DNA from: Pavona decussata
Taxonomy: Eukaryota
Length of the DNA: 64,000 nt
Assembly: GCA_977016875.1 (NCBI GenBank)
Contig: CDRNST010000060.1
Span: forward strand, 1,736,001 to 1,800,000
Direction of reading: 5' to 3'
Numbering within the stretch: the stretch's first letter is position 1; each line of letters begins with the position of its first letter. Shown here one piece after another: positions 7,775 to 47,600 of this stretch. The position numbers and the translations under genes were made by a program. The notes under the pieces were generated by a model. The model had not been told where the DNA came from. It was given only the letters and a program-made list of their open reading frames with translations, and did no database searches.

Positions 7775-20079
<12,305 letters not shown>

Positions 20080-23277: not shown

Positions 23278-24802
23278 CTGGGCTCAGTTGCTCGAAGCAT
23301 GTCTTTCACTAGTAATTTAGGAGAAGGTTGTTGAAGTGGCTGTGTCGAGGAGGATTCTGTCTCTGATGCAAGAGTTTCGTGAGATTGAAAGCGGACCTTT
23401 TCAAATGCTTTGTGGAAACGGGCAACTTCCATTGAAACTTTTGACTTTCCAACACAGTCCTTCCAAAATCTCTTGTCAAGGATCATATATTGGATTGGAA
23501 CCACTGCAAAGCTGGAATAAGCTAACGAGTATGCCCAGAGGTAAGCACAGTGTATTGGCAAGGAGGCAAATCTGTTTCTTAGTATGACCATTATGGCAAA
23601 CATAAGCCACAGGCTCAGGTAAGTAACAATCATGGCCACGCAAATTTTCGTTAGTTTGACTTCCTTCTGCACGCCTGACTTGCCGAGGACGGCCCGAAGA
23701 TGTGACGAGTGCTCCCGAACATGCTTGACAATCCCGTAAAACCGGTTGAAGATGACGCAGAGTGAGGGGACAATCCATACGGTTACTACGACGAGCATAA
23801 CATTCTTCCCCGTGTTTGCCAGGGTGTCAAATACCCGCCCGGGAACACTGCATAAGGGCTTCCCTCGTGCGACGGTTAATATATGCCCGGTGCCCCCAGG
23901 AACGACTGTGAAACATGCAAAGAGCCAGATGAAGATGAGATAATAGGCTGTTTTCCCGCAGGTCATTTTGCGGACTGGTGCGCGGCAAATGGCATCGTAG
24001 CGATCAATAGCGATGGTTGCTAATGTCATGATGTTGACAGCGAAGCACGTGAACATTGTGAAGAATCGCGCCAAGCACACTAAGTAATCAAGTAAATAAA
24101 TTCAAAATTATGTAAGCTTATAAAATGTATTTTGTCATTTAAATTCTGAGTCATACTTGGGTTCAATACACGGACTTAAAAGTTAGAACCATCTTGTGAA
24201 ACAAAACGACAGAAAGGTACTTCGTCAACAGCCAGTCAAACTTTAGGATTTTGTTCAGTCTCAAAAGCTACAAACCTTAAGTTGTGTAATAAATAATACC
24301 AGTAAAATTATATAAGAAGGAGCTACCCTAGTGGCTTTCGTGAATTTTCGTTACCGAGATTTTTTGCCTGGATCCAAAAAAAAAAAAAAAAGAAAAGAAT
24401 AATTTACTGACCCATCATTTAGACGAAGTTTTCACATCGTAAAGCATGGTTTTAGTCGACAAAAAGATAAAAAAAATATATATCAGTTGTAAAAATTTAT
24501 CTCAAATTACCTTGGTTATCCGAGAGGTCGGAGTTGCCGTTGAGGGCTCGCACATGAAGCGGAAGGCTGATCACGTAAGCAATGAGATCAACGGCCGCAA
24601 AGTTTATGATCAGAAGTTTATCGGGTGTTAAACTACCTCGGTGATGTTTGAAGCTGAAAATAAGCAGGATCGAATTTACCATAATCCCCAAGAAACACGC
24701 TAATCCTAAAACAACATTTTGCCCAACTAAACCTGGGCACTGTGCGTTGGTTTGATCCTGTGAACGCCCCAGCGAAAATGTAGAGTTCGGAGAGGTGGTC
24801 AT
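23247..24802 (-). CDS. Orphan rhodopsin-like (class A) GPCR, 2 exons, 374 aa
   Basis: Exons 24802-24511 and 24079-23247, phase-1 GT-AG intron. TM1 LGIMVN, TM2 NFAAVDL, TM3 C...IAIDRYDAIC, TM4 IWL, TM5 IVP, hydrophobic TM6, TM7 VVPIQY; N-terminal NST sequon. Confidence 0.88.
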
Positions 24803-27170
24803 CTTGGATCTTCCAGCGGTTGAGGAGATTCGGCCGTAAAGTTTTGCCTACTAAATTAATCTTTTGTTTTTGCCGAGTACCTGGACCTGGATCAGCAATA
24901 TTCGATTTTAAATCTTCAATGAGCAGATGACCGTGGATGACGTCTTCAATTTGATAAGGAAATCTTTGCACTGAACGGTTCGGATCGTGTAGTACAGGTT
25001 TAGAATACAAAAACGCTTAAATACTGTAATACGAAGGCCAGTCTTGTTACGCCTATATTGAATCAGCAATAGATACGTGATAAAATGAGACTTAACAAAT
25101 ATATCTTTGAATTTGCATAGCGATTATGCATCCGACTTTTAAATATTGATTTTTTCAACATAGCTTCAAGGTTTATCGCGACAAGCCTTGGCAACAAAGA
25201 GCTAAAAGATCATTGCCTATTGGCGCTTTTTACTTTGATAGTAGCGGGGATTTGGAAATAATTACTCAGAGTAAACAGTTATTGAAGCGAACTACATCAG
25301 AGGCTGCGAATTAATTCGTTGTTCTTCATTGCTCAGAAACAATTGGAAAACATATCATTTAAATTTTGGAAAATGGACATTATCAATTAGCCTGATTCAA
25401 CGAAACTTTAAGCAATAAACTCCCAAAATACCGGCCAAATTTGGTTTGTCCCGATTCTTTACCAGAAAACTGAAGAAATTTTAAGGAATCAAATTTTATT
25501 CCACCAATTTAGCTTCATTGAAGCGTTTTTGGTGGTGATTCTCGGAAAACCTTGCTTAGTTAAACTGACTTTAATCACCGAAGTAGCGCTTTTTTTTTTG
25601 TTCTCTCCACAATTGCATGACGTTAATTTTTTTCCAATATAACGAAAACACTTGGTGAAAATGAGAGATGACCAACACCTAACCAACACGTATTTTACCG
25701 GGACGATGTGTTGGGCGCACGCCTTTAATCTACAGCGGGAAGGTAAAAAGTTGACTAAATTTAGTGGGAAGAAAAAAAGAAAGAAAAACTTTGGAAAACT
25801 AAATTCTGCATAAGAGATTTTAATTTGACATGATGGACAAATGAAACAAGATAGCAATCGTGTAAGAACTGAAATAAAATTTTATTTTTTTTGAAGTGAT
25901 GGCGTCAGTTAAGCATGTGACGGTCCCAGGGCAACGTCTTCAAGCCGACTTTGTTCCTCTAAATTCGGGAAACGATGTGTTTAGCCAGCGCAGTGGCACC
26001 CTCTGTACGGTTGACTTTAAAAGAGGGGGGAAGATTCAGTGAGAAGACGGCTTATGCTAAGCTCCTTTTACGCTGCTTAAACAGGAAGCCTACTGATTAA
26101 AGACTAGAACATTAACTCGATCGAAATTCTGACAATAGTATTAAGCGAATTCGCAGTTCACATATATCACGTTTCACTTTCATCTAGATTTAAAACGTGA
26201 TATTCACTGCTCAATCGCCTTATCTACGTGAGCCGTTTCCGTATTGGCTTCCAATATCAGTTTGGCTAAGGTATAGAAAGTAATTAACTTTCCATTTATA
26301 TTGGCCGACAAACAATTACCTGACCTATTTAAATGCAAGTCCATTCGCTAGATTAGATGTTCGTGCGAGCTCGCGTAATTCGGTCGCTGCACGCACGTAG
26401 TCTATCACTCACTTAGTCGGAACCAAATTTTACAGCCGATTTCACTGCAGCGTCCGTTGTCCACCATGGTCTACCCGTGATAAGACAAACGTAAAAGAAA
26501 TTCATACGTAAACTGAGTTCCCACATTAAAGATTGACTTCCTGAAATCCATCCTGAAATCGGCGTATAGACTTGATTCGTAAAACATGACCCAACGGAGT
26601 GAATCGGCTGCATAAACAAATGGTCTTTACATGTATAAAATGTTCATACTAACTGCTTTATCGCTTCTTTTCCTGTCATTTTTGATTTACGGTTGGCGAA
26701 ACAAGTACAAAAAAATAATCTTAACCTCATTTCCTTTTTGGTGGACTGACTAAATCTAATATTTTGGTATTAACCGTGGGAAGTCAACATCAGGTATTAA
26801 TTAAAGTGCAGCTTCATGAAAAATGTATGAAAATTGAAGGTTAAGCTTCAGGACGAATGCCCTGTGATTTTTTTGTTCGAGAACACGCGGAACGCTTTTA
26901 AAAGTGATTCTGAACCAAAATTTGAAACACTTTAAGACCTATTCCAACTTTATCAACAATCGTTCAACAAACGTTTATCGAATGTTGAAATAAATGTTTT
27001 CAAATTCATTAATAATTCATAAAGACAAAACAAGGAAATCACGTGATCTTAATTATCATAAGATTTGGTACAATTTTGCTTTGAATTTCTACCGACAGTT
27101 ATTAATGGTTTGAGAAGCTACATCAAACACGCAAACGAGTTTTTCATCCCATTTCCAAACAACTCGAAGT

Positions 27171-27390
27171 TGGTGAATGAATGAGAATGATGATTATTCT
27201 AGAAAGTGACGCAGGCATACTCGGAAAAAAGAAATGGTAGAGCATCCGAACTAGTAATCGGAAGGTCTTAGGTTCGACTCCTGATAGGAGCACTCGCATT
27301 TCTTTTTTCCGAGTATGCCTGCGTCACTTTCTAGAATAATCATCATTCTCATTCATTCACCAGGCTGGAAATATACCATCACATTTCTTT
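27171..27390 (+). mobile_element. tRNA-centred repeat T1 copy with inverted 5' duplication and 15-bp TSD
   Basis: Perfect 66-bp inverted repeat 27171-27236 / 27297-27362 around a 5'-truncated tRNA-Thr(AGT)-like sequence; TSD caactcgaagttggt 27160-27174 / 27391-27405. Confidence 0.85.
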
Positions 27391-27522
27391 CAACTCGAAG
27401 TTGGTTTTCATATTACTTGAAACCGTCTAAGCGTAAGTGTGGGCTTCATGTATAAAAAAATAAACCACATCGTCTTGTCTTGAAACATTTGTTTTAATTT
27501 GCATCGGTTTTTTTTTTATCTA

Positions 27523-27664
27523 CAGTCGACTCCCGATAACTCGAACCTCCCGCTAACTCGAACCAATTTTCCTTTCCCTTCAGGTCATCTTCTATATAAT
27601 TTTACCCTCGATAACTCGAACTTTTTGTCAATTTTTCTTGAAGGTTCGAGTTATCGGGAGTCGA
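27523..27664. mobile_element. Tc1/mariner-like MITE
   Basis: TA|cagtcgactcccgataactcgaacc ... ggttcgagttatcgggagtcga. Confidence 0.6.
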
Positions 27665-29269
27665 TCAGCTTTTTTATGTTTAACTTATATATTACATAAA
27701 ACACGAAAACAATATTAATGTGGAAATCTATGGTCTACATTTAATCCAGTGGCCATAAGTATTTAATTTAAGATAACACTTCTTACTTTGCCTAACTTGA
27801 ACAGGGACTCACCCACAATCAAGCGTCCAGCCTGGGCATAGCTAAGGGGTTTTGAAAACAATCGACTGTGAAGGTGTTTTCTCTCTATCAAATTTAGCTT
27901 GAAAGAGATTCGAAGATCATACGTCCAAAAGTGTACTAAAAAAAATTAATAACAGAAACAGAGGAAGAAAGTCAAATTTACTGAGATAGTGGCAGAAATA
28001 AATACCAAGTAGCAGAAATGGTTCAATACTGGCTTGCATCAAAATACGTTAATAAAACATGTAAATTTTGCCATTACTTTGAAGAGAATATCTCATACAG
28101 GGTGAGTATACCCCCAGGCTACTTCAGAGGCTTAAATCTTACGGAGCACATTAAAGAGACTATGTCAGCTGGGGCTGATGCACACTAGAATCCGGTTGAG
28201 ACTAATTTGCATACAACTCGTCGCGGGATTTTCGCTTTTCCGCCATTGCAAAAGCTTTCAAAAATATTGCAATAAACAGCTAGCTTCTGTAATTACTGTT
28301 CTCAAACTCATTAATAATTCATCAAGAGAAAACAAAGAAAATCACTACCGTGACCGTGGTTTGGATATGTGATCCTAATTACCATAAAATTTTGCCAACT
28401 GTAGCCTTGAATTTCTCCAAGAATTATTCATCATTTGAGAAGCCATATCAAACACTCGAAAGTGTGTTTCATCAGATATCCAAACACCTCGAAGTCGTTT
28501 TAAAAAACTCGGCTGCGCCTCGTTTTTTCAACCTACTCAGTGTTTGGATATCTGATGAAACACGCTCTCTCGTGTTTGATATATTACAAGAATGTTTGTA
28601 AATAAAAAATTCAGCTAACTTTCCCAAGATGAACGCGATTCAAACAGATGAAAATAGCTTTCTGAACTCTCCGACAAAAAATTTGAAAACTTTGGGCCAA
28701 CGATTTCAAAGTGCTTCTCATCAACTCGCGCATGCGCCTGGGGTGACATAGTCCCTGTAAAGAACCCGAGTGAATAACCCTGCCTACAGACCTGAACTGA
28801 AACATGGTAACAGACTAACAGGCAGACACCTGTTCAATTTCATCAACGATAGTAACATCCACATAAAAAAATTATTCCGACAAAAAGACAATACACAACA
28901 TCGTAAATGTTAACATATCTTCCGGTTCTTCGTCGGCTCAAAAATATTGGAAAACTTAATTTTTCACTGAAATAATTCTTTTGAATAATCTTGTATAATT
29001 TAACAATTTAATTAAACGAAGGATGAAGGGCAATCAGAACAACAACTGAAACAACTACAAAATAATATCTTATCAAAGTCAGTATCATCTTCGTGATCGC
29101 CAACGTCTTCACTAGACATCTGAATCTTTTTAATTGTTAAGTTCAATTTCATCTCCTTCATGTCATCGTACATGTTACCATATTCATAATGCCAATCCTC
29201 GTTATATCAGTGTAAGCGTCAATTCAACCATCGTCTTCGTAAACGTCACCGTCCTGATTATTATCCGAA

Positions 29270-29580
29270 CATCATCATAATTTTCGTAGTCGATCTCATT
29301 TAAATCATCATCGTCATCATCGCCTTTGTTGTTCTCATCATCATCCGTCGTTAACGTTGTTGTCATAAATATCAATCATCGTCGTCATCATCATCATCCA
29401 TCATCACCATCGTCGTCGTCACCATTTTCATCACCATCTTCATCATTACCAACATCATCTCATCTCGTAGTATTGTAAGTACTGTAGTATTGTAAGTAAT
29501 GAGTATTGTAAGTAATGTCGTATTGTAAGTACTGTGATATTCAAGTAATATAGTAATGTAAGTACTGTAGTATTGTAAGT
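29270..29580. repeat. Degenerate (CAT/CGT)n microsatellite followed by tattgtaagta minisatellite
   Basis: Direct inspection. Confidence 0.8.
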
Positions 29581-30669
29581 AAAAAAAAAAAAAACATCTC
29601 ATTATCGTTGTAACCTCATCACCTTTAATACGCTAATTTCCAACATAATTGCCATCGTTATGTTACTCTCCCACTTCCTAGTTATCACTAACCTCTTCAA
29701 ACATATCCTCAAACTCAAGCTCCACCATTCTTATCGTCATCGTATAAAACAGCATCAGTTCTAATCTGTCTTTGTAAACCCACTGACACCTAATGGTGTT
29801 GGCCAGGGACGAAATTGACAGAACCCTCTTAAGTTAAGACGTGTCCTTAGTACTGTTTGTTTATAATAACCTTTTGCTGGCAGAACAATATTCTATCGTT
29901 AAACAGGAAGTTCAGGTATAAAAGGGGCCTGGTCAGGCCATTTTCACCTTCAATTGTCAATCAATCACCAGAGCGTAAACAACTGACAAGCAACGTGTGC
30001 CTTTTTCTTCGGCTTTTACGGATAAAATTGGCTTAGTTTTCAGAATAACCCTCGTTAAACAAATTAAAACTTGATATCTTTTATTGCTGTGGTGATATTT
30101 TAACATATTGAGGCATATTTCTAAGAGGACGCTTGAGTCAACACGCCCACAAAGGTGTGAAATGAAGGAGGGGCTTGCCCTTTTATAGCGGAACTTCTTG
30201 TTTAAGGTAGAATACGTGAATCCGTCCCCTGGTTCTTCTGACATTCAAATACTGTAACAAGTAAAATGTTCTCTGCTGGGACAACTTTGAGCAAACGGCC
30301 AAACAACATTAACAGTTCAGATGTCTTTCGTTTCTCCGTCATCGGAAACAGTCTTTAACCTGTTCTGCTTCACTACAAACAGGTAAACTGTATAAGCAAC
30401 TGACCCGCCTTTTGACAGAACACAAACATGAACAACTTCAGAAGGTGAGATTTGTCCCTTCAAACAGTTTCCAATCTGTTGCATAAACCTCAAGCGCTTG
30501 TCCAGATGAACCCAGACCTGGCTCACCAGTGCTGCAATGTAACAGAACTCGAACAAGCTCCAACAACTTCAGTGTAGATGCTTTTCCAACCTTGGCGATA
30601 CCAGTCCAGCTCCAGTCACCGAACTGCAGAACTACAGAACTATAAAGGCTACTAAACATCCCTTTAGTT

Positions 30670-32604
30670 TCAGTTCCCATACAGCTGGTTTTCCAAGTCC
30701 CTGTGGGAAGCGCTTCTCAGATGCATTGACACAGCCCTCGGGTGCCTGCACAAGACATTGCACAAGGGACAAACAACCTCCTGCGTAAACTGCTCCGAGG
30801 TTCTGAAAACAATGTTAACTTGTAAGTAACTTGTAAGAATCTTTTCTTTTATATAACCTTTCATCCGCAGTGCGTATACGTGTTTCATATATATTCATAT
30901 TTATTTATTCTTTACGGGTATATCATTAACTCGAAACATGACCAGCTCCCAGTTGGCTTGATAGCTCAGCTGGTAGAGCACTGCAGCACCGCCATTGCAG
31001 AGGTCATGGATTCAAATCCCCTACAGGCGTGGATTTGTTTCAGGGTTTTTTCGCAACAGTCTGGTTGCGTAGATAACTGCAGAATCTTTTCTTCTATATT
31101 GTCTTTCATCCGCAGTGCTTATACATGTTTCATAAGTAACTTGAGGTCGTCTTCTTTTATTACCCATGGGCTAATCAGAGTGGGGTTGGGGGTGGGGTTT
31201 ATTATCGGAAGGATTTTAGCGTCAGAGGTTTGGGGGTGGAGGGGGTTGGGCTTTAGATTCGGAATGTTAGAGTAATTGGGCTACTGTACGAGGCACAGAA
31301 AAGCAGTCTAATTTACCTTCCCTCCAAGCTCCTAAGCCACTCCAATTTTTCCAGCAGCTCTGCCTGCTTGATTATGGACTCTTCATCTTCATCCAGTGGC
31401 CTGTTCGAGATGGCAATGCCCTGGTGCAGAGTGTACAGAGCGCAGTCGGTTTCAGTCTTCTCTGGTTGCATTTTGTAAGCATGGTCGATCTGCAATGTTG
31501 TAACAGAAGTTGTCAACGTTGTCAGCACTCTTCAGCTATCTGAACCAACCAGAATGGCGACTAAACTATCACTGGACCTGCCTAACTTTAGCCAACGAAT
31601 AAAGCTGCCTGTTATCACTCCAACACCCTTGGCGGCCGAGATATGTACAACCCTAGCCATGAAAATGGAAGTGTCTACACTTTGGAAAAATTCTACAATT
31701 CTCTATATGTGGAAGTATAGAATTGTGTGAAAGACTAGTTTGTCACACTATTCCACACTTCCGCGTTTAAGAAGTGTAGAACGAAGTAAAGATAACAAGG
31801 GTTCAGTGTCTCCGAAAATGGGTGATATAATCCCTAGTTTGTCGCACTATTCCATACTTCCACATTTAAAGAAGTGTAGAACAAAGTCAAGAATAGTTAG
31901 TCATAGTTAGTCGCGCTATTTCACATTTCCGCACAAAAGAAGTGTAGAATTATTCCAAACCTGGGATTTCAAGGCGAAGGATGGACATTTGTGTGGCGGC
32001 CGGCAGCGATGAGAGGAGGTTGTGTTCGTAGGTTAGCCTAACTTAAAACTGAAAGCAGGTCTATTTACCTGGTTCCATCGGCATGGCCTGGGGAAGGCCC
32101 ACGGCTTTCTGGTTTCTCGGGGTTTTAAAATAAGCCTACGAAAGCAAAAAGAACAAAAAACTGACTTAGAAAAGAATACGGTCAATACAAAAAAGACGCG
32201 TACAGCAGCTAAATGAAGCTTGATAAAACTTTTTCACCAATATTTGCTGCGACAAAGTTTTTTTTATTCGGGTTTACTTAGCCCGCGAACGCAGACGTAT
32301 TTCCAGCTGTCGCTTCTCTCCGCCTTATTTTTCGACGGAGAGAAGCGACAGCCGGAAATACGTCTGCGTTCGCAGGCTAAGTTTACTTTTCCCAGTAACC
32401 AAATAACGGTTGCTCAATAGACTAATGACATCCCAATATAGAACATGGTATTTTGCGGTGACATACTTGGTGATGAGGCGTTTACTGGAGTTTTGAATTC
32501 TCTCCACAGCTGGCGTCCCCCATCCTGCCACCTCTGCTTCGCTTTGTAGCGCCATGTTGATGGCGGTGCGCACTGAGTTTATCTGTAATTAAGCAACGGA
32601 GAAA

Positions 32605-32639
<35 letters not shown>

Positions 32640-35600
32640 AGAGGAAGACGACATTCTAAAATGTGGAGGACTTCCTTGTGGTCCTGTGTCCTGTATTCAA
32701 ATGCAAGCTGTTCGGTGGCACTAGTTGTTGACTGGGTTTCACTTCCAAGTCCGCCAGCGATGAAATTTTAGTGTGACAATACAATGAAGACAACTGAACA
32801 GTTACTTTCCTGTGGTATTATTTCTTAAGCTGCAGAAGGTGGTTCTAGCTTTTGAATATGTGGAGGAAATCCTAAAGTGTGACCATTTAAATGAAAGGTA
32901 CTGAGCCTTCCTTTTCTGTGGTGCTGTTCATTATGCTATACAAGGTGGTTCTATCTTTTGAATTTGTGGATGAAATCCTTGAGGGTGACCATTCAGCTGA
33001 AAGCTACTGGGAAGTGCTTTGCTGTAGCGCTGTTTGTTATGCTCTACAAGGTGGTTCTAACTTTTGAATTTGTGCATGTAATCCTCAAGTGTGACCATTT
33101 AGCTGAAGGGCTGCTGAGCAGACATTTCATTCTATCATCATCAAAACACTTTTAAAACATCGCCCAAAACGTACCAGAATGATGTCGTCTTGTGTGATCT
33201 CCACCTCAAACACAAGCTCACTGTCATGGTCTGGAAGAAGGGCGTGTCCTGTGCTGGGATCATACCCCAGGCCTACCAACGCTCCTGTGTACTTACGCAT
33301 TTCAGGGTCAGTTCTGTAAACAAAGAAAAAGGAATCGATAAAACAGAAACAAGACTCCGAGCTGTTAATAGTGTATCCTGGATGCCGGAGGTCGAGTTTT
33401 TAATTCGAGATACATATATTAAGTCCAAAATCGGCGTCATCTGTTTTCCAACCACCAAGCTAATTACCCCATTTACAGTAAACAGGTTACTAACTATTTC
33501 TACCCAAGACGGAACGCCGAGATTCAGCGAACAAACGATTGGATGCACTGCAGACATGCATTTCTATAGAGTGTGTGCACGGCGGCCATGTTGGAGGACT
33601 AAAACAATAGAATACATTTGCATAAAAATAGAATATATTTCCCAAAGGAAAATCATTGTATTGTTTCGGTCCTCCAACATGGCCGTCGTGCACACACTCT
33701 ATAGCCTAATTCAGTTCCATACTATCGTCCACGATCTTTTGATTTATAAACCAGTAGCAGTCTTTTGCAGCTCGTATGTGTGAGCTTTGATGGCAATTTG
33801 AAATAGTTGCAGAAGTTGTGAAAGAGATAGGATGTTATGTTTAAAGCCTGGTGAATAAATGATTGATGTGTTCTTTCAGTCAGTGACACAGGCACACTCG
33901 GAAAAAGAAAATCCGAGTGCTCCTATCAGGAGTCGACCGTAAGACCTTCTGATTACTAGTTCAGATGCTCTATCACTGAGCTACAGGAGACTCGTGGGAG
34001 CAAACAAAGGCCATCAAATTAGGTTCATGGGACAAACATCCTGCATACTGCTAGGACTTGAATGTCAATGAGTGGTATATATGTAAGAGATGTTACATTT
34101 TAAGCCTGGGCTCGATTGTTCGAAAGCTGATTGACGCTAATCCACGGTTAAAAGTTAACCGAGGTTTTCATCTCGCTCGTTAAGATGATTTTTAAAGGCT
34201 AAGTTTAAGCTAATGGTAAAGAAAAGTTTAAGGCAAAACTGAGGGACGAAAATCTTTTGGAAGAATTCGTATGGGTTAGTAAATAAACTCGAATCAAAGT
34301 TCGCGTTAACCCAGGATTAGTTTAATAGGAACAACTGGGCCCTGGTGAATATACTTGATCTAGTATACTATCATTATATCATTTAGATGTAAGTTGGACG
34401 AGTTGTATGGACAAACGCTGCCCCAAAGCAAGATCTTATCATCAAGCAACGTTTTCCGTAAGTATAATGTGACTATTATAAATTTTTTAAATATTCTAAC
34501 CACCATAAAATCTCTGTTACTTGTCTGAGGTCTCTAAATGGGAAGTGCACCCATTGAGACAACGACAGGGAACTACTTAAATGAATATGAATACCTGAAA
34601 ACATGTATTATTTAAATGCAGGTGGAACATTAAATAGAAGAAAGGCCCTGGCAGTCATTTGCGCAACTAAAGCAGTTGCGAAAAGAAAGCCTGCAAAAAA
34701 TGATTCGAATTCACAACGATACCGGTGCAGTGCTCTACCAATTGAGCTATCAAGCCAACTGGGAGATGGTCATATTGTGCATTCGTAATATACCCCGTAA
34801 CCCGTGGAGGATGAACATGTATGAAAACATATATTTGCACTGCGGGTGGAAGATTAAATAGAAGAAAGGCCCTCGCAGTTATTTACGCAAGGAAATAACT
34901 TGCCTCTAAAATTGAATTAAATGATCAATACCATCAATGATCACTGTTTTCAGCGCGATCGTTGGCGATCAACGATCAAGACTTGTTTGCGTGACCCCAG
35001 CTCCAAGGAGCAACTGCGGCACGAACGAGGCAACAAAGATTTACCTTAGTTCAGCAAATGGAGCAAAGATTAGCGAGACAATAGGCAGCAGGCCGTGTAT
35101 GTTTGGCATCAGGGTTGTATCTCTGAAATGTAAGCAGACAAAACACATCAGTATACAGCTTGTCCGCGTTAGCACCATGCAAGGAAATACACTGACGGGG
35201 TAGGGTGGGGGTCTTATGCCTTTGACTCCATGTTTTCTTTTTCACTAGCGTAGGAAGAGAACGTTCATGTAGGTGGTTTTTCTATTCTTGTCGTCTAGGG
35301 GTGGGGAGGGGTGTAGGGGTTATTGCTGGGTTGTGGAAATTTGCCAGACAAGGGAGCGCTATTCTGCCGGTGTAGGGACAGGATGGCTACAATGTAAGCC
35401 CCTGGATCTCACTCAACGCTAGCATTCACTGGTGCTTAAGCGACGTAGTTAGTATTACGCAATTGCTTGTTTGGAATATTTGGCTTTGTGTGCTTACCTC
35501 CAATTTTCTTTTTGGATCTAATAGCCTTTGATACTAAGACCTGCTTTTCCCACATAGTAATAAACTGCGCAAAAATATCTCTGTATTAGGAGCCTGAGAG

Positions 35601-38600
35601 CACCGTCGTTCTACATCGTGGAAAAGATTTACCTTGCAACTACTGTAGACCCTGTGGCATTAATGCCAATGTTGGCCGCGACTAGAAACCTCGTATGAGG
35701 GTCTTGGGGCTGGTCATTCAGGGTAACACTGTTTACGGAGCCCTGTTCAATTCTGGCTGACCTATAGTAAATAAACAGTGACAGTTAATACGTTCTCTGG
35801 CTTACCTTCGCTCTGTGAAGTACTTACATTTGCTTATACAGACTTTAGAGTGTATATGAGCTGAATTTTTCCATGTCTTTTAGCTGCCGAACCAAACCTA
35901 TTTTTCCTTATCAAGTGTCCCGGAGACTGGGGGCGAAAATTGGGCTCGTGACGTCAGCTGGTTTCATTCACGGATTTCAGAGTACTTGATTTCCAGCCAT
36001 TTTTGGGGCGCAGCACTTGAAATTTTCGCACAATTACTTCTCATTTTAAAGCTGTTTGGTTTGATTTAGCGAATGTCTAGCATTTCAAAAAGCAACGAAT
36101 CTCTTTCTTCTGTGGAAAGTTTTGATGAAAGAGAAGATTTAGACGAGGAATGGAGATTATAGAAAGCGAAATAACGCCATATCAAGACACACCGATGCCC
36201 TAGATAACTATTTTATTGGGGCTCTATACAGCTCTGCCAAGACACCTTCCCAAGTATGGTGGAAGTGACCAAACATTCTTATGATTACAACCAACGCTTA
36301 CCAAGATCACAAAAAGATCCAAAAAGTTTACAGAAGTTTGCTTAAATCAACGAATGGTATAAGTTCTTGTAAAACCCTTTGAACATCGCGGATGCTATCC
36401 AGGTTGTTTCGAATTTGTCGTGAAAACAGTGCAAACCCGCAAGCCCAATTTTGCGGAATGCAAACGGTATAGAATTAATTAACTGTGACACACAGGTTAC
36501 TTCACCTCATCCGTCCTATGTTAGTGATGTTGTAGAAACTCATTTCAATTGGGCTCTCAGGTCCGCGTAAAGTCACCTATCCAGGAACAAAGATTGAAAT
36601 ATTAACTCTCACAACTCCTGATAATACGTCCCATTTACTCTTAGCTTTGAGAATTTGTTATTTCGAAGCTATGTTCTTGATAATCTCGCTGGACTATGTT
36701 CATACTGTACTGGATCAATTTTGGATGAGTAACAGAAGTTGCACTGGTTGACCTTTTGTCCACACTGTACCTGCTATCTGTGCAAGTTTAGAACCTATTC
36801 CAGAATCTGAAACACTTTTGAATCCAATTGGCTCGGTGTGAACATCTGGCTACAATTATAGAGAAAATGATGGCATAACTCAGTCAGTTCTGTAAAGGAT
36901 CCAAGCTGTACTGGTGTTCGGATCTTCGACAGCTGTATACTACTACAGATTGAACCATGCAAATTTTGCACCAGTATACTATAAACACCCTCTAAGAGCT
37001 GAGTATTGGTCAACCCATCCCTTGTTTTTAAAGTAAAATAGCACTACGAGCCTAAGTGGCCCACACGGCCAAAACTTAACCCGCTTTCTGCAGCATGAAG
37101 CAACTAGGAGTATTGCTACTCCCTCCCTGGATGGGATCATCCATCGTGCAGGGTTACCCCAAGCAGTATGTGGCTGGTACCCATTTATACACCTGGGCCC
37201 AGTTGTTCAAAGCCCGATTAAGCTAATCCTGGGTTAACGTGAACTTTGATTCGAGTATATTTACTAATCCGTAAGAATTCGTCCAAAAGATTTTTGTCCC
37301 TTAGCTTTTCCTTAGACTTTTCTTTTCCATCAGTTAAAAATGAGCCTTTAAAATCATTTTTACTGAGCGAGATGAAAACCTCGGTTAACTTTTAATCGTG
37401 GATTAGCGTTAATCGGCTTTCGAACAACCCGGCCCTGGGTAAAGAGAGATAATGTGGAGCAAAGTTTCTTGTCTATGGAAACAACACAGCAATGAAGAGA
37501 CCAACCTGGCCTCCGACCACCACCGGACCCTTCGATCTTCGTCCGATCGAAAATCCGACGCGCTAACAACTACTCCACCACGCCTCCACAATAAAATATG
37601 ATGTAGTAAAAATATAGCCGCACGAGACTTAACTGATGTCCAAGTGATGTGCATGTTATACGCAAACAATTAGGAAATATCTTGTTACAATCATTGCGGT
37701 ACCTTCGTACAGACGTCATCCTGTACATCCATGACGCTCATATCTACTGTATCAAGCCAGGTGGTGTTATCAACACCTTCCCCGGAGGCATTCTGATGAG
37801 CCATCTATGCAAAATAAACAAATGAAAAACATCATTGTCGTCATCATCAGCAGCATCGTTGTCAACACCATTACCATGATGAAAATAAACACTTAATAAC
37901 TGGTCTCGAGGGAGGGAGTTCAATGGAGTCTATAACCTTAGACGCATGAGACTCCTCCTGAAACATGGCGAACCCCTCATCAATGAGCCTCTGGTTGATG
38001 TGAATATCTTCTTCAGTGCTGGTGTCATACAAGTCCACACGAAGAACGTTCCTCATCAGCGAGTACACCTACAATCAAACAAAAGAATGAGAATTGATTC
38101 GCTTTCTATACGACTTGTACTACGTGAAGGAATGATCCAAAGAACGTGGAAGGTTCAGTGTTTTCAAACCAATAGGCCATTTTCGAGTTGCTTTGAACCT
38201 CATTATGAAACCGAGGCTAAGTGCAAAGTTTTTATTTGAAAATAAATTTTCGTCCGAAAAGGTTTTGCACTTAGCCTCGCTTTCATAATGAGGCTCACAG
38301 CAACTCGCAAATGGCCTATGAGGATAGATCTTTCTGCAGGGGCTGCCTTGGCACTATGGAACAAGTTGCCCAGCGAACTTCTACTGTTAACTACTGTTAA
38401 ATTAACTAACTAATTAACTACTGTTGAATTGATTTCAGTGCATGGTTTGTCAAAGCTGAGGACGAGTACGTACCATCTATCAGCTTTGACTTTTAATACT
38501 AATTAAGTTGTGATACCATTTAAAATTCGTAATTTTAGCAAAGTCTCAACATAGTGTTTAGCTTTCCTCGTGTCATTTTATATTTCAACAAGAAAATTAA

Positions 38601-41600: not shown

Positions 41601-44600
41601 TCTGAAAGAGGAATACGCTGAAAACTGTTGCTTGGTAACGAAAAATATCCAAATAGCCAAAGTAAAAGAATCGAATTCTTATTATGTTTTAGAAGAAATT
41701 AAATTTTTCGAGGTATTGAATTCTGATTTGCAATATCCGAAATATTCCCCCATAAAAGCGCCCTTAGCTAACTCACGAGCATCCCACTCCAATGTTTGAT
41801 GAGGCAAATCCTAGAGACATGGAGCTTGCTGCAGTCAGAATTCAGCCCAAGTAATTCCTTGAGGAATGGGTAATATTGTGTTGTATTTATGGTTATATTT
41901 GTCACCCTGTATTAATCATATTTGAGTAATAACTTTATTCGTGTCAAAGTAAACTTAACATGAGGAAAAGAATCGTTCTCACGGCTACTTGGGGACACCT
42001 AACCAAGGTCGTAAATTTACAATTATATACATGATTTATTTAAAATATCGTAAAATTACATCCATGATTATTTATTGCATTCGACGAAGAAAGAACGCAC
42101 TATTAATAGGCCTTTATCACACAGCGGCCATGTTGAGTCTCAGGAGAATAAAAAGCTTTGCTTTTGCACGGTAAGCCTCGAACTGAATTCGCGTCTGGTC
42201 GAGGCTTGCCGTGCGAAAACAAAGCTTTTATTGTCCTGAGACTCAACATGGCCGCCGAATGACAAAGGTCTATTGCGTTTAGAGTCGAGATTGTATGGGA
42301 CAATGAATGGATCTTGGGACGTGTACCTGGCATCCCCCGCAGATTTTGCAGGGGCGGATGACATCACCACAAACTTGGCAAAGGAGAGAAAGAGCCTGCA
42401 ATCTAGATCATCGAACGCACTCCTAATACAGATTGGAGTTGAGACTGTATGGGATAGTCGATCGATCAACGAATGGATCTTGGGACGTGTATCTGGCATC
42501 CCCCACAGTTTTTTCAGGGGCGGATGACATCATCATCAACTTGGGAGAGAACCAGGTGACATCTAACACACTCCCTAATCTTTGATTACTACTAGACATG
42601 TATACGCTATACGCATTGGAAACTGCCATTTAAATCCATACCTTCAAATTTCTACCTTCATTCATGTTTATTTTCTCTTGCAACATTTGCAGCCTTGTAG
42701 CGGATTCACTGTCCGGCTTCTGAGCCCAAAAGTGTCCAGCGTCCATCACCTGTAATCACACATAGGTGGGTATAAAAACTCACAGAAATGCTCTTGTTAC
42801 GATTGACTTTTGTTTGTCACTAGAAATGTAGGGTAAGAGTGAAGTCGGCAATTCTTCCAGTGTCTGTAGCACAAAACAGCAGGAGAGACGTGAAAGGGTC
42901 CCTTACGGGTTAACCGTGGTCAAACGCAAAACATATGAAAAAATCCGTTAAAGATGAGGCTTTTACTTGAGGACTCAAAGTTGATAGAGCGGTTTTCAAT
43001 TGAGTGTTGTAAAACCAAAACCAAAGTAATTTCTCAGGCCAATCGCAACAGATGTAAACAGCACAATCAGCCAATCAGAACTCGAAGCAAATACATGTAA
43101 CCGGCGCCAAGCGCGGGAAAACGCGTGCGGCCAAAACACGATTGGTTTTGGTTTGGCTTCCCATTGGTTGAGAAAATGGCGCGAACTTTACCAACCAATC
43201 AAAGAGTCTAGTAAAGCAAAACCGAAGCAAACGCGAAGTAACTTTCGACACTCAATTGAAAACCACTCTAAGTTTTTTGTGGGTCTGTGAGTTTACCAGA
43301 TTTAGGATATGCCAAAAACGTTTCAGGAATCATTAAATGAATCGGTTTTACAGATGTCACACATTTAAATAGAAAACAAAGACATAGCACCGACGAGTCT
43401 CCATTTGAAATCAAATCAAATCCTTCTCTTTCAGCATCACATGTTGGTTGAGTTTGCACTGGTTCTTGTCCTGCTTCAAGTTTAGTTTGCTTTCCACCAC
43501 ACAAACCAAGATTTCTCTCCTCCAATCCAATCTAGATCCAAACTGGGGGCCTCAGACAAAAGACTTACATATCCTCTCCAAGTAAATATTGTGAAACTAA
43601 TTTTGGAGTTCTTACCACTGATGTCACAATTTCTAGGTAGCCAGTCTTTGGAAGTTTAATCTGTTGAGCATAAATTCGAAGAGAATTATATTAAGGTTAC
43701 AACACACTCGTGTATATAATTTGACTTTTTTCCACATTTCTGACATATTTTATTTATACTCTCCACTCTTACTGTTACATAAGCGCAAAATACAAAAGTT
43801 GGAGGTATTAAGGCATAGACTAACACGTAGCTCAAAAATAAACTAAATAGGGGAGAGGAGAGTAGAGGGGCACCTCTAGTAAAACTAATACTGTGCCCCT
43901 TTAAAGGAAGTAAATTGATAAGAAACGTAACTAAGTAGAATAGAAAAAATAAGAAAGATATAGCAAAAGGAAAACAAAAAACAAAGAGAAACGGAAATAA
44001 TGTATATAACGTAGTGTATATAATATAGTGTATATAATATAATAATGTAGCTTAAAGACTGACCCGCCTCGATTAGCGTTGCTATTTTGTGGCCCAGTAT
44101 AACATCTACCTAATTTTCTGTAAATAAATATATTGCTGTGGTTGTTGTTACACTCCGCCCAGTCTGCCTAGATGTCACGTTAACGCGTGAGTATCGTTCG
44201 CGCACGTTTTGTGTGCACGCCAAAATTTTCATGATGCACGACAAATTTAGTATTCTGAATTAACTTGCTAAAAAACAGCCTCTAGGTAATAAAACAGTTG
44301 GAGTTGGAAGGCGCATGAACATGTTTTGGTTGCTTTCTCTTCTAAATGCCTTTGTCAGTATGTTGAGAATATAAAATTAGCAATGTTTCAAGATAATTCA
44401 TGTTTGTTTATTTTTTGTTATCAAGAACGGCATCATAACAGAACAAGTCCGCTACCTGATTTGCTGCTTCGACAGGCTCCCCACCGTAAGTACCCCTTGA
44501 CGACAGAGTTGTAGCAATCCTAAACAAGACAACATGACAAAAAGAATAAATTAAAGGCAACTAAAAGAAAATAGTAATATTAAATCTTTTCTGTTAAAAT

Positions 44601-47600
44601 TGAAAGTATATATTAACCTTCTCTGAAAAGAAGACGAGAAATAGGGAAGGGAGGATTAGGGTTGAGGTTAGATTAGGGTTAGGTTTACAGTCTACCCCCA
44701 AAAATCACACCCCGTTTTTTTTAAAATTAGGTTACGTGTAAAAGCAGAACAGTAATTCAGCCTAGGTTGTTAACGCATTTGACCTTAATTTGGATTCCCC
44801 TGGCAACTTATTTGCCTATGACAAACAAAATTCAGAACTAGTAATCGGAAGGTCTTAGGTTCGACTCCTGATAGGAGCACTCGGATTTCTTTTTTCCGAG
44901 TATGCCTGTGTTACTTTCTAGAATAATACATAATTCTCATTCATTCACCAGGCTTGAAAATATACGATCACATTTATTTCATATACCACACATTCGACAT
45001 TCAAATCCTTGCAGTACGCAGGATGTTTGTCCCATGAACCTAGTTTGATGGCCTTAGCTCCCACGAGTCTCCTGTAGCTCAGTGATAGAGTATCCGAACT
45101 TGTCTAGTAATCGGAGGGTCTTAGGTTCGACTCCTGATAGGAGCACTCGGGTTTTTTTTCCGAGTATTCCTGTGTCATTTACTGATTAACACATCATTGT
45201 CAAAATTCCACCTGATGAAATCTCTGTCACATACATCCCTGAGTATTGATCATTGTTGAATTGGATAGCAAACGTACTTGTTTGATCTGAGTCTCCTCTG
45301 TTCTCCTTGAGTTCTATCTGCCATAGCATTCCTCTCTTCCATTAATTGATCCATCTGCCTTGTTTTGGCTTCCGAAATGAACAGATTTAATGGAATCCGA
45401 AGGTGTCTGAATGGGGCAAAACAACAAAATTATGACAATCACACAACGGTAACATAGGTATAATTTTGTCAAATTAAGTTAGACTGCGAGCAGTCGTACT
45501 TTTTGCCCCGAATCACACGCGCAAAGTGACGTTCAAAAACTCATTAATAATTCATAAGCCCATTGACCTATCAAATGGTCGATAAAACATCACATGCAGT
45601 GGTTTTAAAACCTGATAAAACCTCCTCCTTATTAGTATGCGGTGTTTCATCAGTTGATAAAACACTCCTTATTAGTATGCGATGTTAAATGTTTTTCTCG
45701 TATGCTACTTTCCAACGTTCACAAAAGCATAATTGTTATAAACTCTGTTGACACACCCTTTTTAAGCCGTTCAAAAACCTCGCAGCACATGTTTTATCGG
45801 GTCTAAAACCACTCGGCTGCGCCTCGCAGTTTTAAACATTACATAAAATTATGCAAATTAGAAAAGTAAACGGGGAGGGATTGCAGACCTTAAGAGAAGA
45901 AAGAGACTCGCAGTCTAAAATATCATTGATCCAACATATCTCCTTGGAAAGTAAAGTAGCCATGAATCATGAGTTCATTTGAAGTAGCCTTACATGTATA
46001 GTCTTTCAGCAATTGACGTTTCGAATCTCACCTCATTTTAATGGCCTTGTAAACACCTGGAAAAATAGTGTTGGACTGCTGCTCCATTCCAGGCGGTTTC
46101 TCAAACTCAATGTAAGCTCTGAATGTAACCAAAAGAAACGCATTTCATTAAACTACCAAGATGTCATATAACCAAGCAACAATTATCTTTGGTATTCCGT
46201 GGAGTAGGGAGACATACCACAGGACCCTTCAGTTACTTGTTGGGAGAATTAAATTTAAATAAAATAAATAAAAAATAAATAAATGGGAATTTCATTGCCT
46301 TTCACACAGTGCCTCTTTCATCTGCTGTTTCCAGGTCGAATTGGAGTTTGGGATGTTGGTTTTTGTTAAGGAAGGAAAATTGGAGTACCGGGAGAAAAAC
46401 CCTTGAAGCAGGGATGAGAACCAACAACAAACTTCTTTCACAATTTATCTGAATGTTGAGATATTTTATCTTCTGTTTACAATCATTTCCTCTATTCTCA
46501 TGGACTGTTGTTTGATCAAGTAGTGATATTACGAGGGGAAATTATATGTAAAATACTCTACCTAGTGGCTAACAGGTCAAACAAAATAATGATCTGTATT
46601 GTTTCGCATATTTAATACCATTTAATTATGCACAAAGTAATCTAATTAAAGGGGAAGTATCATGGGGTTTTTCATATCTTTTGTCAAAAATGATGACATA
46701 AGACATTCAAATCAGCTGACAAATAATTCTAGAATGACGAGAAGAAAGAAATCAACTCAATTCTTGAAAGGAACGACTCGTGATCTGTTCTAGCGCATTT
46801 TGGAAACAAAAATGCGAGAACTTGAAAAACATTAGCCTAACATTTTTCAAGTTTCAATCCATACCGGCCTACTCTGTCTCTGGCTAGGGGCTCTAATTGA
46901 CAGTTTTATTGCACTTGGGTGATAATTTATAACAAACTTGACAATTATTTCTCTGTTTCTGCTGACAGACAAAGATTTTTGGGTTTTGAAATGACAGCGA
47001 ATTTGCGTGATACTTCCCCTTTTAGCAACGTTCAGTTAATTTATGCAGATTCTTTAAGATTTTAAGTAACATAAATGAAACCAAGCTTACACACCTGCTT
47101 TCTTCAAAGAAGAGAGCTTTGCCTTTGCCACACTGGCGGAACATTCTTGCAATTGCTGAACGGTAAAGAGCGCCATGTGGAGGCATGTTTCTGACCTGCA
47201 AAATAATTAAGGCGGCAAGAGATTTATGCGGGATTTCTGATAGCGAAATAGTCAAGCAGACATAATAACTTCAAGTAAATGACGAACGTGGTTGTTGTTT
47301 CTATTGTAAGTTACTATATAATAATTTATGGGAGAACAATATTATAGATGCTTTATTCTAGGAATGAGAAGTCAAAGTATCCCTGCTTACTATAACAGTG
47401 GTGAAAGGATCATGGCCAGACATGGTCTTCATCACTTCGGCTTCATCCATATCAGTCGAGGAGAAGTAGTTGGGATAGAATGCACCACAGATCACAAGCT
47501 GAAGGGACAAAAACAAAGTCGATCTCATCCTCTAATTGTTGGGCATGGTTTGTAAATTGCATTTAATGAGAAATAAGTAATAGTTAAGCCAAAGAAAAGG

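What the first reader, a model, noticed from the sequence alone, without database searches (positions are those of the whole stretch)
27160..45208. tRNA-centred, terminally redundant mini-retroelements (family T1): a candidate Penelope-mobilised or circular-RNA system rather than a SINE
Seen: a ~261-bp unit has a foldable tRNA-Thr(AGT)-like cloverleaf in its interior (acceptor tctcctg/taggagc, D arm, anticodon stem tccga/tcgga with an 8-nt loop actagtaa, T arm ttcgact). It is followed by a hairpin enclosing an oligo-T run (actcgga-tttctttt-tccgagt), and ~150 bp of conserved sequence lies upstream of the tRNA. Copies begin and end at different points of the unit: 1.4 tandem units at 44834-45200, one unit plus redundancy at 33823-34350, a truncated copy at 27171-27390, and fragments at 12293 and 50164. 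Known: classical SINEs start at the tRNA, and Pol III would stop at the T-run, so the upstream part could not be copied. Partial tandem units and inverted 5' ends are hallmarks of Penelope-like insertions and retrozymes. Inference: a non-autonomous PLE-dependent element in which a tRNA fold (RNase P/Z processing, promoter or stability) replaces the hammerhead ribozyme, copied from a circular or multimeric RNA.
Basis: partly seen in the sequence, partly recalled or inferred. Interest (0 to 1): 0.8.

Follow-up and report, generated by a model that had tools for sequence, protein, structure and literature searches.

The report
Penelope-type mini-retroelement carrying a tRNA cassette
A young 259-bp repeat carrying a tRNA-like gene spreads through this animal genome with the same odd insertion pattern as the resident Penelope-like retrotransposons, so it looks like a ribozyme-free relative of "retrozymes"; its helper element and its RNA form are still unknown.

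Summary
T1 is a 259-bp unit with at least 1,200 near-consensus units in the 602-Mb genome. Sampled copies are 97-100% identical to the consensus, and one insertion is absent in another sample.

Each unit holds a tRNA-like cloverleaf (Rfam tRNA, 49.6 bits in young copies). A 7-bp hairpin enclosing a T6 run follows it. No ribozyme was found.

Insertions are unit multimers with scattered 5' ends. Many have a head-to-head inverted second arm, 7-15-bp target duplications and no poly(A). There are two 3' end points, at unit positions 57-70 and 100-104. In 16 of 16 inverted insertions one arm ends short and the other long.

The resident RT+GIY-YIG Penelope-like elements (PLEs) show the same geometry and the same one-sided tail. 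I therefore read T1 as a non-autonomous element copied by PLE machinery (about 0.8).

No sequence-related PLE partner was found among about five families sampled. DNA copies do not begin or end preferentially at the tRNA boundaries, so "tRNA replaces the hammerhead as a processing site" is not supported. The A-box half and the T-run are the segments best conserved with sister family T2, which points to a Pol III cassette.

Circular versus multimeric template is unresolved, because no RNA data were available. First readers flagged the same family elsewhere in this genome.

The parts
27160..27174 (.). Left target-site duplication of copy A (caactcgaagttggt)
   Evidence: The same 15 bases recur at 27391-27405
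27175..27235 (-). Copy A, inverted arm: T1 unit about 6-67/70, ending near the 'short' 3' end
   Evidence: 100% identity to the consensus over unit 6-70 on the minus strand; inverted repeat I8 is 96% complementary
27235..27390 (+). Copy A, forward arm: unit 202-259 (3' two-thirds of the tRNA-like module) plus unit 1-100, ending at the 'long' 3' end
   Evidence: blastn to the consensus at 99-100% identity
27391..27405 (.). Right target-site duplication of copy A
33819..34109 (-). Copy B (older, 78-87% identity): unit 68-259 plus 1-100, so about one unit plus tail redundancy
33918..33990 (-). tRNA-like module of copy B
   Evidence: Rfam RF00005, 34 bits
34110..34340 (+). Unrelated repeat of about 230 bp nested inside copy B; not part of T1
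   Evidence: Repeat families D3, I1, I2 and I4, also at 23036-23256, 37192-37435 and 50038-50165
34341..34352 (-). Remainder of the copy B 5' end (unit about 60-71) beyond the nested repeat
   Evidence: Reading of the sequence
44826..44833 (.). Left TSD of copy C (caaaattc)
   Evidence: Repeated at 45201-45208
44834..45200 (+). Copy C: unit 212-259, one full unit (44880-45145) and unit 1-57, ending at the short 3' end; 1.4 units
   Evidence: 92.5% identity to the consensus, with a 7-nt insertion in the anticodon loop
45068..45145 (+). tRNA-like module of copy C, with A box TAGCTCAGTG and B box GGTTCGACTCC
   Evidence: Rfam RF00005, 38.6 bits, E=1.6e-6 in the local search
44879..44901 (+). Hairpin enclosing the T-run, directly after the tRNA-like 3' end
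45145..45165 (+). Second hairpin and T8 run of copy C
45201..45208 (.). Right TSD of copy C
12287..12501 (+). Diverged relative: unit 164-223 and 7-55, split by an insertion of about 107 bp from another repeat
50142..50253 (+). Diverged, 5'-truncated relative (unit about 209-259 plus 1-60), abutting the unrelated repeat at 50038-50165

Best explanation
T1 is a recently active, non-autonomous retroelement with a 259-bp unit. It is inserted by target-primed reverse transcription of the Penelope-like (PLE) type, presumably by a resident RT+GIY-YIG PLE acting in trans.

Shown:
- The template RNA is in the tRNA-sense orientation and spans the tRNA-like module uncut.
- Copying starts at one of two places, unit 57-70 ('short') or 100-104 ('long').
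- It runs through one to several identical units and stops at scattered 5' points.
- In most sampled insertions a second arm, copied from the same template, is attached head-to-head.
- One arm ends short and the other long. This is the one-sided 'tail' described for PLEs.

Inferred:
- Each unit carries a complete Pol III-type cassette: a tRNA-like cloverleaf with A and B boxes, then a T6 run 7 nt downstream.
- I take this cassette to be a Pol III / TFIIIC module, acting as a promoter or keeping chromatin open as in SINE heads and TRIMp3 elements. I do not take it to be a cleavage signal that replaces the hammerhead.
- The copied template is a homogeneous multimer or a circle. Which of the two is open.
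For: Family and age:
- The first look gave 2,337 candidate places. 30-mers of the unit occur 828-1,235 times at up to 2 mismatches.
- 37 sampled genomic units are 95.8-100% identical to the consensus, and 36 of them are at least 97%.
- A contig of run X7 spans the empty site of the L016 insertion.

Target-primed reverse transcription:
- Most of the 20 sampled loci show clear TSDs of 7-14 bp, and none has poly(A).
- 3' ends fall at unit 57-66 or 100-104. 5' ends and arm junctions are scattered.

PLE signature:
- 16 of 16 inverted insertions (15 loci plus window copy A) have one short and one long end.
- All 17 opposite-strand neighbour clusters among the first 100 listed matches are (-,+) and none is (+,-); one search shows the same.
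- The resident PLEs do the same. GIY-YIG gives 933 candidates, and 13 of 13 neighbour pairs are (-,+).
- Their arms are 97-100% identical.
- In PLE families A and B an 85-90-nt tail sits at one end only, on either arm, with TSDs of 7-12 bp.
- Craig et al. 2021 (PMC8557442) describe exactly these features: 5' truncation, partial tandems, an adjacent inverted copy, and a 30-40-bp tail at one end.

One template per insertion:
- Private variants are shared by all units and both arms: 170G>A in L019, 97T>G in L028, 81A>T in L026 and L031, 30T/41T/97C in L010, 114T in L018.

Cassette:
- Rfam tRNA scores 49.6 bits in young copies, and no ribozyme is found at E<=10.
- The T-run is present in all diverged copies read.
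- Against sister family T2, the A-box half is 85% identical and the hairpin/T-run 81%. The anticodon and T arms are 57-58%, the leader 43% and the tail 52%.
Against: - No sequence similarity was found between T1 and the 3' ends of the sampled PLE families. No other repeat shares T1's tail at high identity. Partnership therefore rests on geometry alone.
- A T6 run 7 nt after the tRNA should stop Pol III. A Pol III transcript from the cassette would then be about 90 nt and could not be the template for copies that include unit 17-186. The cassette's role in mobility is an inference.
- No RNA data exist. No holder run is on record as RNA, and the runs that were laid behave like DNA.
- The sampled loci are the best-scoring hits, so they are biased towards young multi-unit copies.
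Confidence: 0.8

Rival explanations
1. T1 replicates through a 259-nt circular RNA, retrozyme-like, whose unit-length ends are made by tRNA-processing enzymes (RNase P/Z or the splicing endonuclease plus a ligase) instead of a hammerhead. PLE reverse transcriptase then rolls around the circle.
For: - Arrays have a perfect 259-bp period, and all units and both arms share private variants.
- Young insertions hold 1-5 units, and copying starts at internal sites (unit 57-70 and 100-104). A template without a 3' end would behave this way.
- Metazoan retrozymes are thought to work like this with hammerheads (PMC7229834; bioRxiv 10.64898/2026.07.22.740005).
- In PLE family A a hammerhead-like core (CTGAAGA, helix, GAAA) ends about 50 nt before the short end. 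The T1 tRNA ends 59 nt before its own short end.
Against: - No ends of DNA copies pile up at the tRNA boundaries.
- RNase P and RNase Z together would cut the tRNA out of the unit, yet every copy keeps it.
- RNase P/Z products (5'-P, 3'-OH) are not substrates of RtcB, the ligase implicated for retrozymes (established knowledge; for RtcB).
- The unit is not rod-like: MFE z = -3.6, and the cloverleaf is not formed in the whole-unit MFE.
- Homogeneous linear multimers transcribed from existing arrays explain the same DNA facts.
- No RNA data are available.
Confidence: 0.15
2. T1 is an ordinary tRNA-derived SINE moved by a LINE. The inverted arms come from twin priming, and the tandem units from template jumping or later unequal crossing-over.
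For: - A and B boxes, variable TSDs and 5' truncation are also LINE/SINE features.
- Up to 46 copies begin at the tRNA 5' end.
- Tandem and palindromic SINE structures are reported in a blood clam (PMC11481361).
Against: - The tRNA is not at the 5' end of most copies, and 82 nt of leader are always included between units.
- There is no A-rich or simple-repeat tail.
- The strict pairing of a short with a long end (16 of 16) and the prevalence of inverted arms match the resident PLEs, not twin priming, whose inner breakpoint and outer end are not fixed.
- The internal T6 run is atypical for a Pol III-transcribed SINE body.
Confidence: 0.07
3. [quoted passage not shown]
For: - Terminal redundancy that contains a tRNA-like sequence resembles Helenus (PMC10886601).
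- Both outer ends finish in ...TCA.
- Arrays reach about 16 units on contig C58.
Against: - TSDs vary from 7 to 15 bp, against a fixed 4 bp for animal Helenus.
- 5' boundaries are variable, so there are no fixed LTRs.
- Inverted arms are common.
- T1 k-mers are absent from the Helenus supplementary files.
- Variable-length TSDs exclude a DDE transposase.
Confidence: 0.03

Closest known systems
Metazoan non-LTR retrozymes (Cervera & de la Pena 2020, PMC7229834; Li et al. 2026 preprint 10.64898/2026.07.22.740005)
   Same: Short non-coding units (about 170-400 bp) in tandem. [quoted passage not shown]
   Different: Retrozymes are defined by a type I hammerhead in every unit and by circular RNA. 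T1 has no ribozyme and carries a tRNA-like Pol III cassette instead. Circles were not tested.
Schistosome Sm-alpha / Sj-alpha SINE-like elements (as reviewed in PMC6765202)
   Same: A Pol III promoter lies inside a unit of about 330 bp that is found in tandem. The promoter is not at the 5' end of the processed monomer, so tandem copies are needed for propagation.
   Different: Sm-alpha has an active hammerhead. T1 has none, and it has a T6 terminator right after the tRNA-like part.
Non-autonomous PLEs such as MRC1 / Chlamys-N in Chlamydomonas, and ribozyme-free Naiad PLEs (Craig et al. 2021, PMC8557442)
   Same: pLTR or multicopy head-to-tail insertions, inverted copies and a one-sided tail. 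A hammerhead is not obligatory.
   Different: Those non-autonomous elements share their 3' ends with an autonomous family. No such similarity was found for T1. None is reported to carry a tRNA gene-like cassette.
TRIMp3 elements: Cassandra (5S), Helenus (tRNA), Ajax (Kojima 2024, PMC10886601)
   Same: A small-RNA-gene-derived Pol III promoter (and in Cassandra a terminator) sits in the terminally repeated part of a miniature non-autonomous retroelement.
   Different: Those are LTR elements with PBS/PPT and fixed 4-5-bp TSDs. T1 has PLE-type ends, 7-15-bp TSDs and inverted arms.
Classical tRNA-derived SINEs
   Same: A tRNA-like module with A and B boxes, TSDs and high copy number.
   Different: In T1 the head is not at the 5' end. 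There is no LINE-type tail, a terminator lies inside the copied unit, and the architecture is multimeric and inverted.

Membership tests
PLE-dependent non-autonomous retroelement | Fixed 3' end without poly(A), frequent 5' truncation, variable TSD | tested here: met
   Most of the 20 sampled loci and 2 window copies show TSDs of 7-15 bp. 3' ends fall at unit 57-70 or 100-104, and 5' ends are scattered
PLE-dependent non-autonomous retroelement | Partial tandem (pseudo-LTR) and adjacent inverted 5'-truncated copy | tested here: met
   15 of 21 sampled loci are inverted and nearly all hold more than one unit. 17 of 17 opposite-strand clusters are (-,+)
PLE-dependent non-autonomous retroelement | Short extension ('tail') at only one end of the insertion | tested here: met
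   16 of 16 inverted insertions pair a short end with a long end 35-47 nt further on. Resident PLE families A and B show the same with 85-90-nt tails
PLE-dependent non-autonomous retroelement | Autonomous PLEs present and recently active in the same genome | tested here: met
   933 GIY-YIG candidates, arms 97-100% identical, and a 991-aa RVT_1 + GIY-YIG ORF
PLE-dependent non-autonomous retroelement | 3' end similar in sequence to an autonomous PLE family | tested here: inconclusive
   No similarity to the 3' ends of families A-D or to the 30 further GIY-YIG loci, which appear to be mostly family A. Other families could not be fetched
Metazoan retrozyme | Type I hammerhead ribozyme in each tandem unit | tested here: not met
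   No ribozyme family at E<=10 on a three-unit array or at E<=1 in the window. There is no CUGANGA...GAAA core on either strand
Metazoan retrozyme | Unit-length circular RNA | not testable with these tools
   No run on record as RNA, and only contigs are available
Classical tRNA-derived SINE | Copies begin at the tRNA-derived head | tested here: not met
   At most 46 matches with a foreign upstream context at the tRNA start, against about 1,200 units. A control position gives 39. The sampled 5' ends are scattered
Classical tRNA-derived SINE | Internal Pol III A and B boxes | tested here: met
   TAGCTCAGTGGTAGAGC and GGTTCGACTCC lie within a 49.6-bit tRNA match. The box consensus itself is from established knowledge
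Classical tRNA-derived SINE | LINE-derived or A-rich / simple-repeat 3' tail | tested here: not met
   Ends are ...CATTCTCA or ...TTTCTTTCA(TAT), directly followed by the TSD. Similarity to LINE 3' ends was not tested
Helenus / TRIMp3 | Fixed LTR boundaries and a 4-bp TSD (animal Helenus) | tested here: not met
   TSDs are 7-15 bp and 5' boundaries vary. T1 k-mers are absent from the Helenus supplements
Functional tRNA gene | Canonical cloverleaf with a 7-nt anticodon loop and a paired 1-72 | tested here: not met
   The loop is 8 nt (ACTAGTAA) and there is a U1.C72 mismatch. ARAGORN finds no gene

The most novel reading that the evidence does not exclude
T1 (with its sister family T2) is a ribozyme-free 'retrozyme'. 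Unit-length RNA would be released from multimeric transcripts and circularised by host tRNA-processing and ligation enzymes acting on the embedded tRNA-like module. PLE reverse transcriptase would then copy the circle by rolling-circle synthesis, starting at two internal sites. That would be a protein-enzyme route to small replicating circular RNAs in animals.
Probability: 0.12. Interest if true: 0.85.

Novelty: new variant of a known kind. Interest (0 to 1): 0.6.

Why it matters
Penelope-like elements have the least understood insertion mechanism of the major retrotransposon groups, and no in-vitro system exists for them. T1 offers many very young insertions of a 259-bp unit in which every junction, arm, tail and TSD can be read exactly, including the strict pairing of a short with a long end. 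That makes it a natural reporter for the PLE mechanism.

T1 also shows that a PLE-type parasite can do without a hammerhead and can carry a complete Pol III tRNA-gene-like cassette instead. This extends the theme of a small-RNA gene inside a non-autonomous retroelement from LINE partners (SINEs) and LTR partners (Cassandra, Helenus) to the PLE class.

For annotation, such families are likely to be mislabelled as SINEs, satellites or LTRs.

Tried and rejected
- **Partner search.** blastn (word size 7) and Smith-Waterman of the T1 dimer against 30 GIY-YIG loci and 13 full PLE pairs found only independent T1 insertions near PLEs (L031, L063, L065) and nothing above shuffled controls. A pattern demanding the T1 tail after a non-T1 context found 5 places, all truncated or inverted T1.
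- **Ends at tRNA boundaries.** Negative-context patterns gave 30 hits at unit position 1, 46 at the tRNA start, 39 at a control position (131) and 5 at position 60. The baselines differ too much for any claim. Ends at the RNase P site gave 13 hits, mostly 1-nt indel variants.
- **Recurrent junction GAGTGCTCCTCGG.** It occurs at 17 or more loci and looked like a hot spot at the tRNA 3' end. None of them continues as T1 consensus, so it probably belongs to another subfamily. Left open.
- **Copy-number differences between 30-mers** were meant to count short and long termini. Polymorphic sites confound them, so I dropped this.
- **Expression.** No run on record as RNA holds T1. The depth profiles of the 'RNA?' runs match the DNA-like run, so there is no conclusion about transcripts, circles or RNA ends.
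- **Covariation.** The only compensatory change in the anticodon stem (TCCGA/TCGGA to TCTGA/TCAGA in copy B) is two CpG transitions. That is not evidence of selection on structure.
- **Hammerheads in resident PLEs.** Rfam finds none at two PLE 3' ends. A regex finds a hammerhead-like core only in family A.
- **Prior description.** T1 k-mers are absent from the full-text library and from the Helenus supplements. The bivalve SINE papers hold no supplements as text.
- **Organism.** It could not be named, because run names are coded.

Full report
**What is in the window.** The coordinates given hold three members of one repeat family.

- Copy C (44834-45200) is 1.4 units between 8-bp direct repeats (caaaattc).
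- Copy A (27175-27390) is a perfect young insertion between 15-bp direct repeats. Its left 61 bases are the reverse complement of unit positions about 6-70, joined head-to-head to unit 202-259 plus 1-100.
- Copy B (33819-34352, minus strand) is an older copy of about one unit plus 41 nt of redundancy. It is split at 34110-34340 by an unrelated repeat of about 230 bp that also occurs at three other places in the window.
- The pieces at 12287-12501 and 50142-50253 are diverged relatives.

Rfam calls a tRNA at 45068-45145 (38.6 bits) and at 33918-33990 (34 bits). ARAGORN calls none. The fold is a normal cloverleaf except for an 8-nt anticodon loop and a U.C mismatch at the top of the acceptor stem. 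Directly after it lies a 7-bp hairpin whose loop and 3' stem hold a T-run.

**The family in the genome.** The assembly is 602 Mb. A search with one unit gave 2,337 first-look candidates. Three 30-mers of the unit occur 1,077, 828 and 1,235 times at up to 2 mismatches, against 0 for the reversed controls.

From 20 non-redundant loci and the window I took 38 full units. The consensus is 259 bp. The 37 genomic units are 95.8-100% identical to it (36 of them at least 97%), and the window unit is 92.5% identical.

A contig of run X7 joins the two flanks of the L016 insertion without T1, so that insertion is polymorphic. A metagenome contig, Ga0099808_1639414, holds a relative of about 80% identity with an inverted arm and the same end motif, so the family is not confined to this assembly.

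**Anatomy of insertions.**

- Most of the 20 loci show a clear target duplication of 7-14 bp, AT-rich, and none has a poly(A) tail.
- On the tRNA-sense strand the downstream end is fixed at one of two places: '...CATCATTCTCA' (unit 57-66, 'short') or '...CACATTTCTTTCA(TAT)' (unit 100-104, 'long').
- The upstream end is anywhere in the unit. The template was therefore RNA of tRNA-sense polarity, copied from a defined 3' site towards a variable 5' stop.
- Most insertions hold more than one unit, usually 1-5 and about 16 on contig C58.
- 15 of 21 sampled loci, and window copy A, carry a second arm in inverted orientation with the 3' ends pointing outwards.
- Among the first 100 places listed for one 30-mer, 17 clusters mix strands. 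All 17 are (-,+) and none is (+,-); one search shows the same.
- In all 16 inverted insertions one outer end is short and the other long. The long end can sit on either arm, and on the longer or the shorter arm.

**One template per insertion.** Variants private to a locus are present in every unit and in both arms. Examples are 170G>A in L019 (four of four), 97T>G in L028, 81A>T in L026 (five units) and L031, 30T/41T/97C in L010, and 114T in L018. A few arrays show single differences between neighbouring units (L015, L023). The arms are therefore products of one event, and the template was a homogeneous multimer or a single unit copied repeatedly.

**Comparison with the resident Penelope-like elements.**

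- The GIY-YIG family gives 933 candidates. Among the 150 scored, 13 neighbour pairs lie within a few kb, and all 13 are (-,+).
- I fetched these pairs. Their arms are 97-100% identical.
- In families A and B the two outer ends differ. One arm stops at a short end, and the other runs on for 85-90 nt to the TSD of 7-12 bp. This extension can be on either arm.

Craig et al. 2021 describe this set for PLEs: 5' truncation, partial tandems forming pseudo-LTRs, an adjacent inverted truncated copy, and an extension at only one end (PMC8557442; also PMC8969392). T1 reproduces every point with a tail of about 41-44 nt. This is my main ground for assigning T1 to the PLE machinery. It is an argument from shared geometry, not from a shared sequence.

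**The partner is not identified.** T1 shows no similarity above shuffled controls to the 3' ends of PLE families A, B and C, and no blastn hit to the other sampled loci apart from independent T1 insertions nearby. No other repeat carries the T1 tail behind a different upstream sequence.

One weak lead remains. T1's two ends, T2's end and the short end of family A all fall at TCA|T.

**What the tRNA-like module does.**

They do not.

- The fixed 3' ends lie 57-104 nt downstream of the tRNA.
- Copies that stop at the RNase P site are nearly absent (13 hits, mostly 1-nt indel variants).
- Foreign-context starts at unit 1 (30 hits, 17-18 of which share one junction that does not continue as T1) and at the tRNA start (46) are in the range of a control position (39).
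- Every copy keeps the tRNA inside the copied stretch. This means the template was not cut there.

*Pol III cassette.* The module looks like a whole tRNA gene. It has A and B boxes matching the consensus, and a T6 run 7 nt after the discriminator base. A T-run is kept in all diverged relatives I read.

The sister family T2 (window 30838-31134, TSD aagtaacttg) aligns with T1 over the whole unit (z = 6.2) and has its own tRNA-like part (28.7 bits) followed by a T6 run. Between T1 and T2:

| Segment | Identity |
|---|---|
| A-box half | 85% |
| Hairpin / T-run | 81% |
| 20 nt upstream of the tRNA | 70% |
| Anticodon arm | 58% |
| T arm and acceptor | 57% |
| Tail | 52% |
| Leader | 43% |

These figures are, which compares a single T2 copy with the T1 consensus. 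The pattern fits selection on a Pol III promoter and terminator better than selection on the whole fold.

The difficulty is that a Pol III transcript ending at the T-run (about 90 nt) cannot be the template of copies that include the rest of the unit. The template must come from read-through or from another polymerase, and the cassette's contribution is inferred. Possibilities are an occasional read-through promoter as in schistosome Sm-alpha, TFIIIC-bound open chromatin, or ribosome or export mimicry as proposed for SINE heads.

**Circle or multimer.** Perfect periodicity, unit homogeneity, internal start sites and multi-unit arrays in young copies fit rolling-circle copying of a 259-nt circle. 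They fit equally well the copying of multimeric transcripts from arrays that are already homogeneous.

The unit is moderately structured (z = -3.6) but not rod-like. No run on record as RNA holds T1, and the contigs of the 'RNA?' runs behave like DNA. I leave the circle at about 0.12-0.15.

**Other rivals.** A LINE-driven SINE with twin priming explains neither the fixed pairing of short and long ends nor the constant inclusion of the 82-nt leader between units. It also does not explain the missing A-rich tail. A Helenus-type miniature LTR element is excluded by TSDs of 7-15 bp and variable boundaries, and T1 words are absent from the Helenus supplements. Variable-length TSDs also exclude a cut-and-paste or foldback DNA element.

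**Novelty.** The text library holds hammerhead retrozymes as PLE dependants, Sm-alpha with a Pol III promoter plus hammerhead, non-autonomous Chlamys elements, and tRNA- or 5S-bearing LTR miniatures. It also holds an unexplained report of tandem and palindromic SINE structures in a blood clam.

I found no description of a PLE-type element with a tRNA gene-like cassette and no ribozyme, and no printed match to T1 words. The library is incomplete, and Repbase and Dfam could not be searched. I rate T1 a new variant of a known kind.

First readers of this scan flagged the same family on many other pieces of this genome. Those notes are unchecked and were not used as evidence.

**Limits.**

- The sampled loci are the best-scoring ones.
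- Genome-wide end maps were approximated by pattern counts.

Noticed in passing
window 30838-31134 (+), and a second, partial copy around 34587-34903 (-): Family T2 is about 1.2 units between direct repeats aagtaacttg. It has its own tRNA-like module (30955-31030, Rfam 28.7 bits) and a T6 run, and it ends in ...GTTTCAT like T1's long end. It is homologous to T1 over the whole unit (z = 6.2), so T1 and T2 form a superfamily.
   Followed up: partly
window 34110-34340; also 23036-23256, 37192-37435 (-), 50038-50165 (-): An unrelated repeat of about 230 bp (85-89% between copies). It is nested in T1 copy B and abuts the T1-like fragment at 50164. It was not classified.
   Followed up: no
L074 (metagenome contig Ga0099808_1639414), about 670-830: A T1 relative of about 80% identity with an inverted 5' arm and the end motif ...CCATTCTCA, in a public metagenome. 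The family therefore exists in another sample, possibly a related species.
   Followed up: partly
17 or more genomic loci, e.g. G000:C37:1505669, C49:5006372, C121:112312: A recurrent junction GAGTGCTC|CTCGGATTTC: the reverse complement of the tRNA 3' end joined to the start of the hairpin. None of these loci continues as T1 consensus over the next 45 nt, so they probably form a separate subfamily with an inherited inverted junction.
   Followed up: partly
L061:8903-8962 (G000:C179): A 60-nt piece of the T1 leader (unit 128-187, 80% identity) that stops at the tRNA 5' boundary and is followed by unrelated DNA. A genome-wide search found no class of such ends.
   Followed up: yes
L061-L063, L070 (PLE family A); L067-L069 (family B): Resident RT+GIY-YIG Penelope-like elements occur as head-to-head pairs with 99-100% identical arms, an 85-90-nt tail on one end only, and TSDs of 7-12 bp. 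Family A has a hammerhead-like core (CTGAAGA, 6-bp helix, GAAA) about 85 nt before its short end. Rfam does not call it.
   Followed up: partly
L030 (G000:C72:2507138-2510396): A T1 insertion inside an (AAT)n microsatellite. Microsatellite targeting is reported for some PLE clades. This is a single case.
   Followed up: no
window 62878-63729 (-) and 23247-24080 (-): A 283-aa ORF with a partial integrase core (rve, below the Pfam cut-off), and a 277-aa open frame matching 7tm_1 (a GPCR exon).
   Followed up: no
T1 subfamily with 41A>T and 48T>A (e.g. L013, L017): The 48T>A change turns AATAAT into AATAAA 11 nt before the short end, which falls at a CA. This could be a poly(A)-signal-like context. 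It may be coincidence, since the copies carry no poly(A).
   Followed up: no
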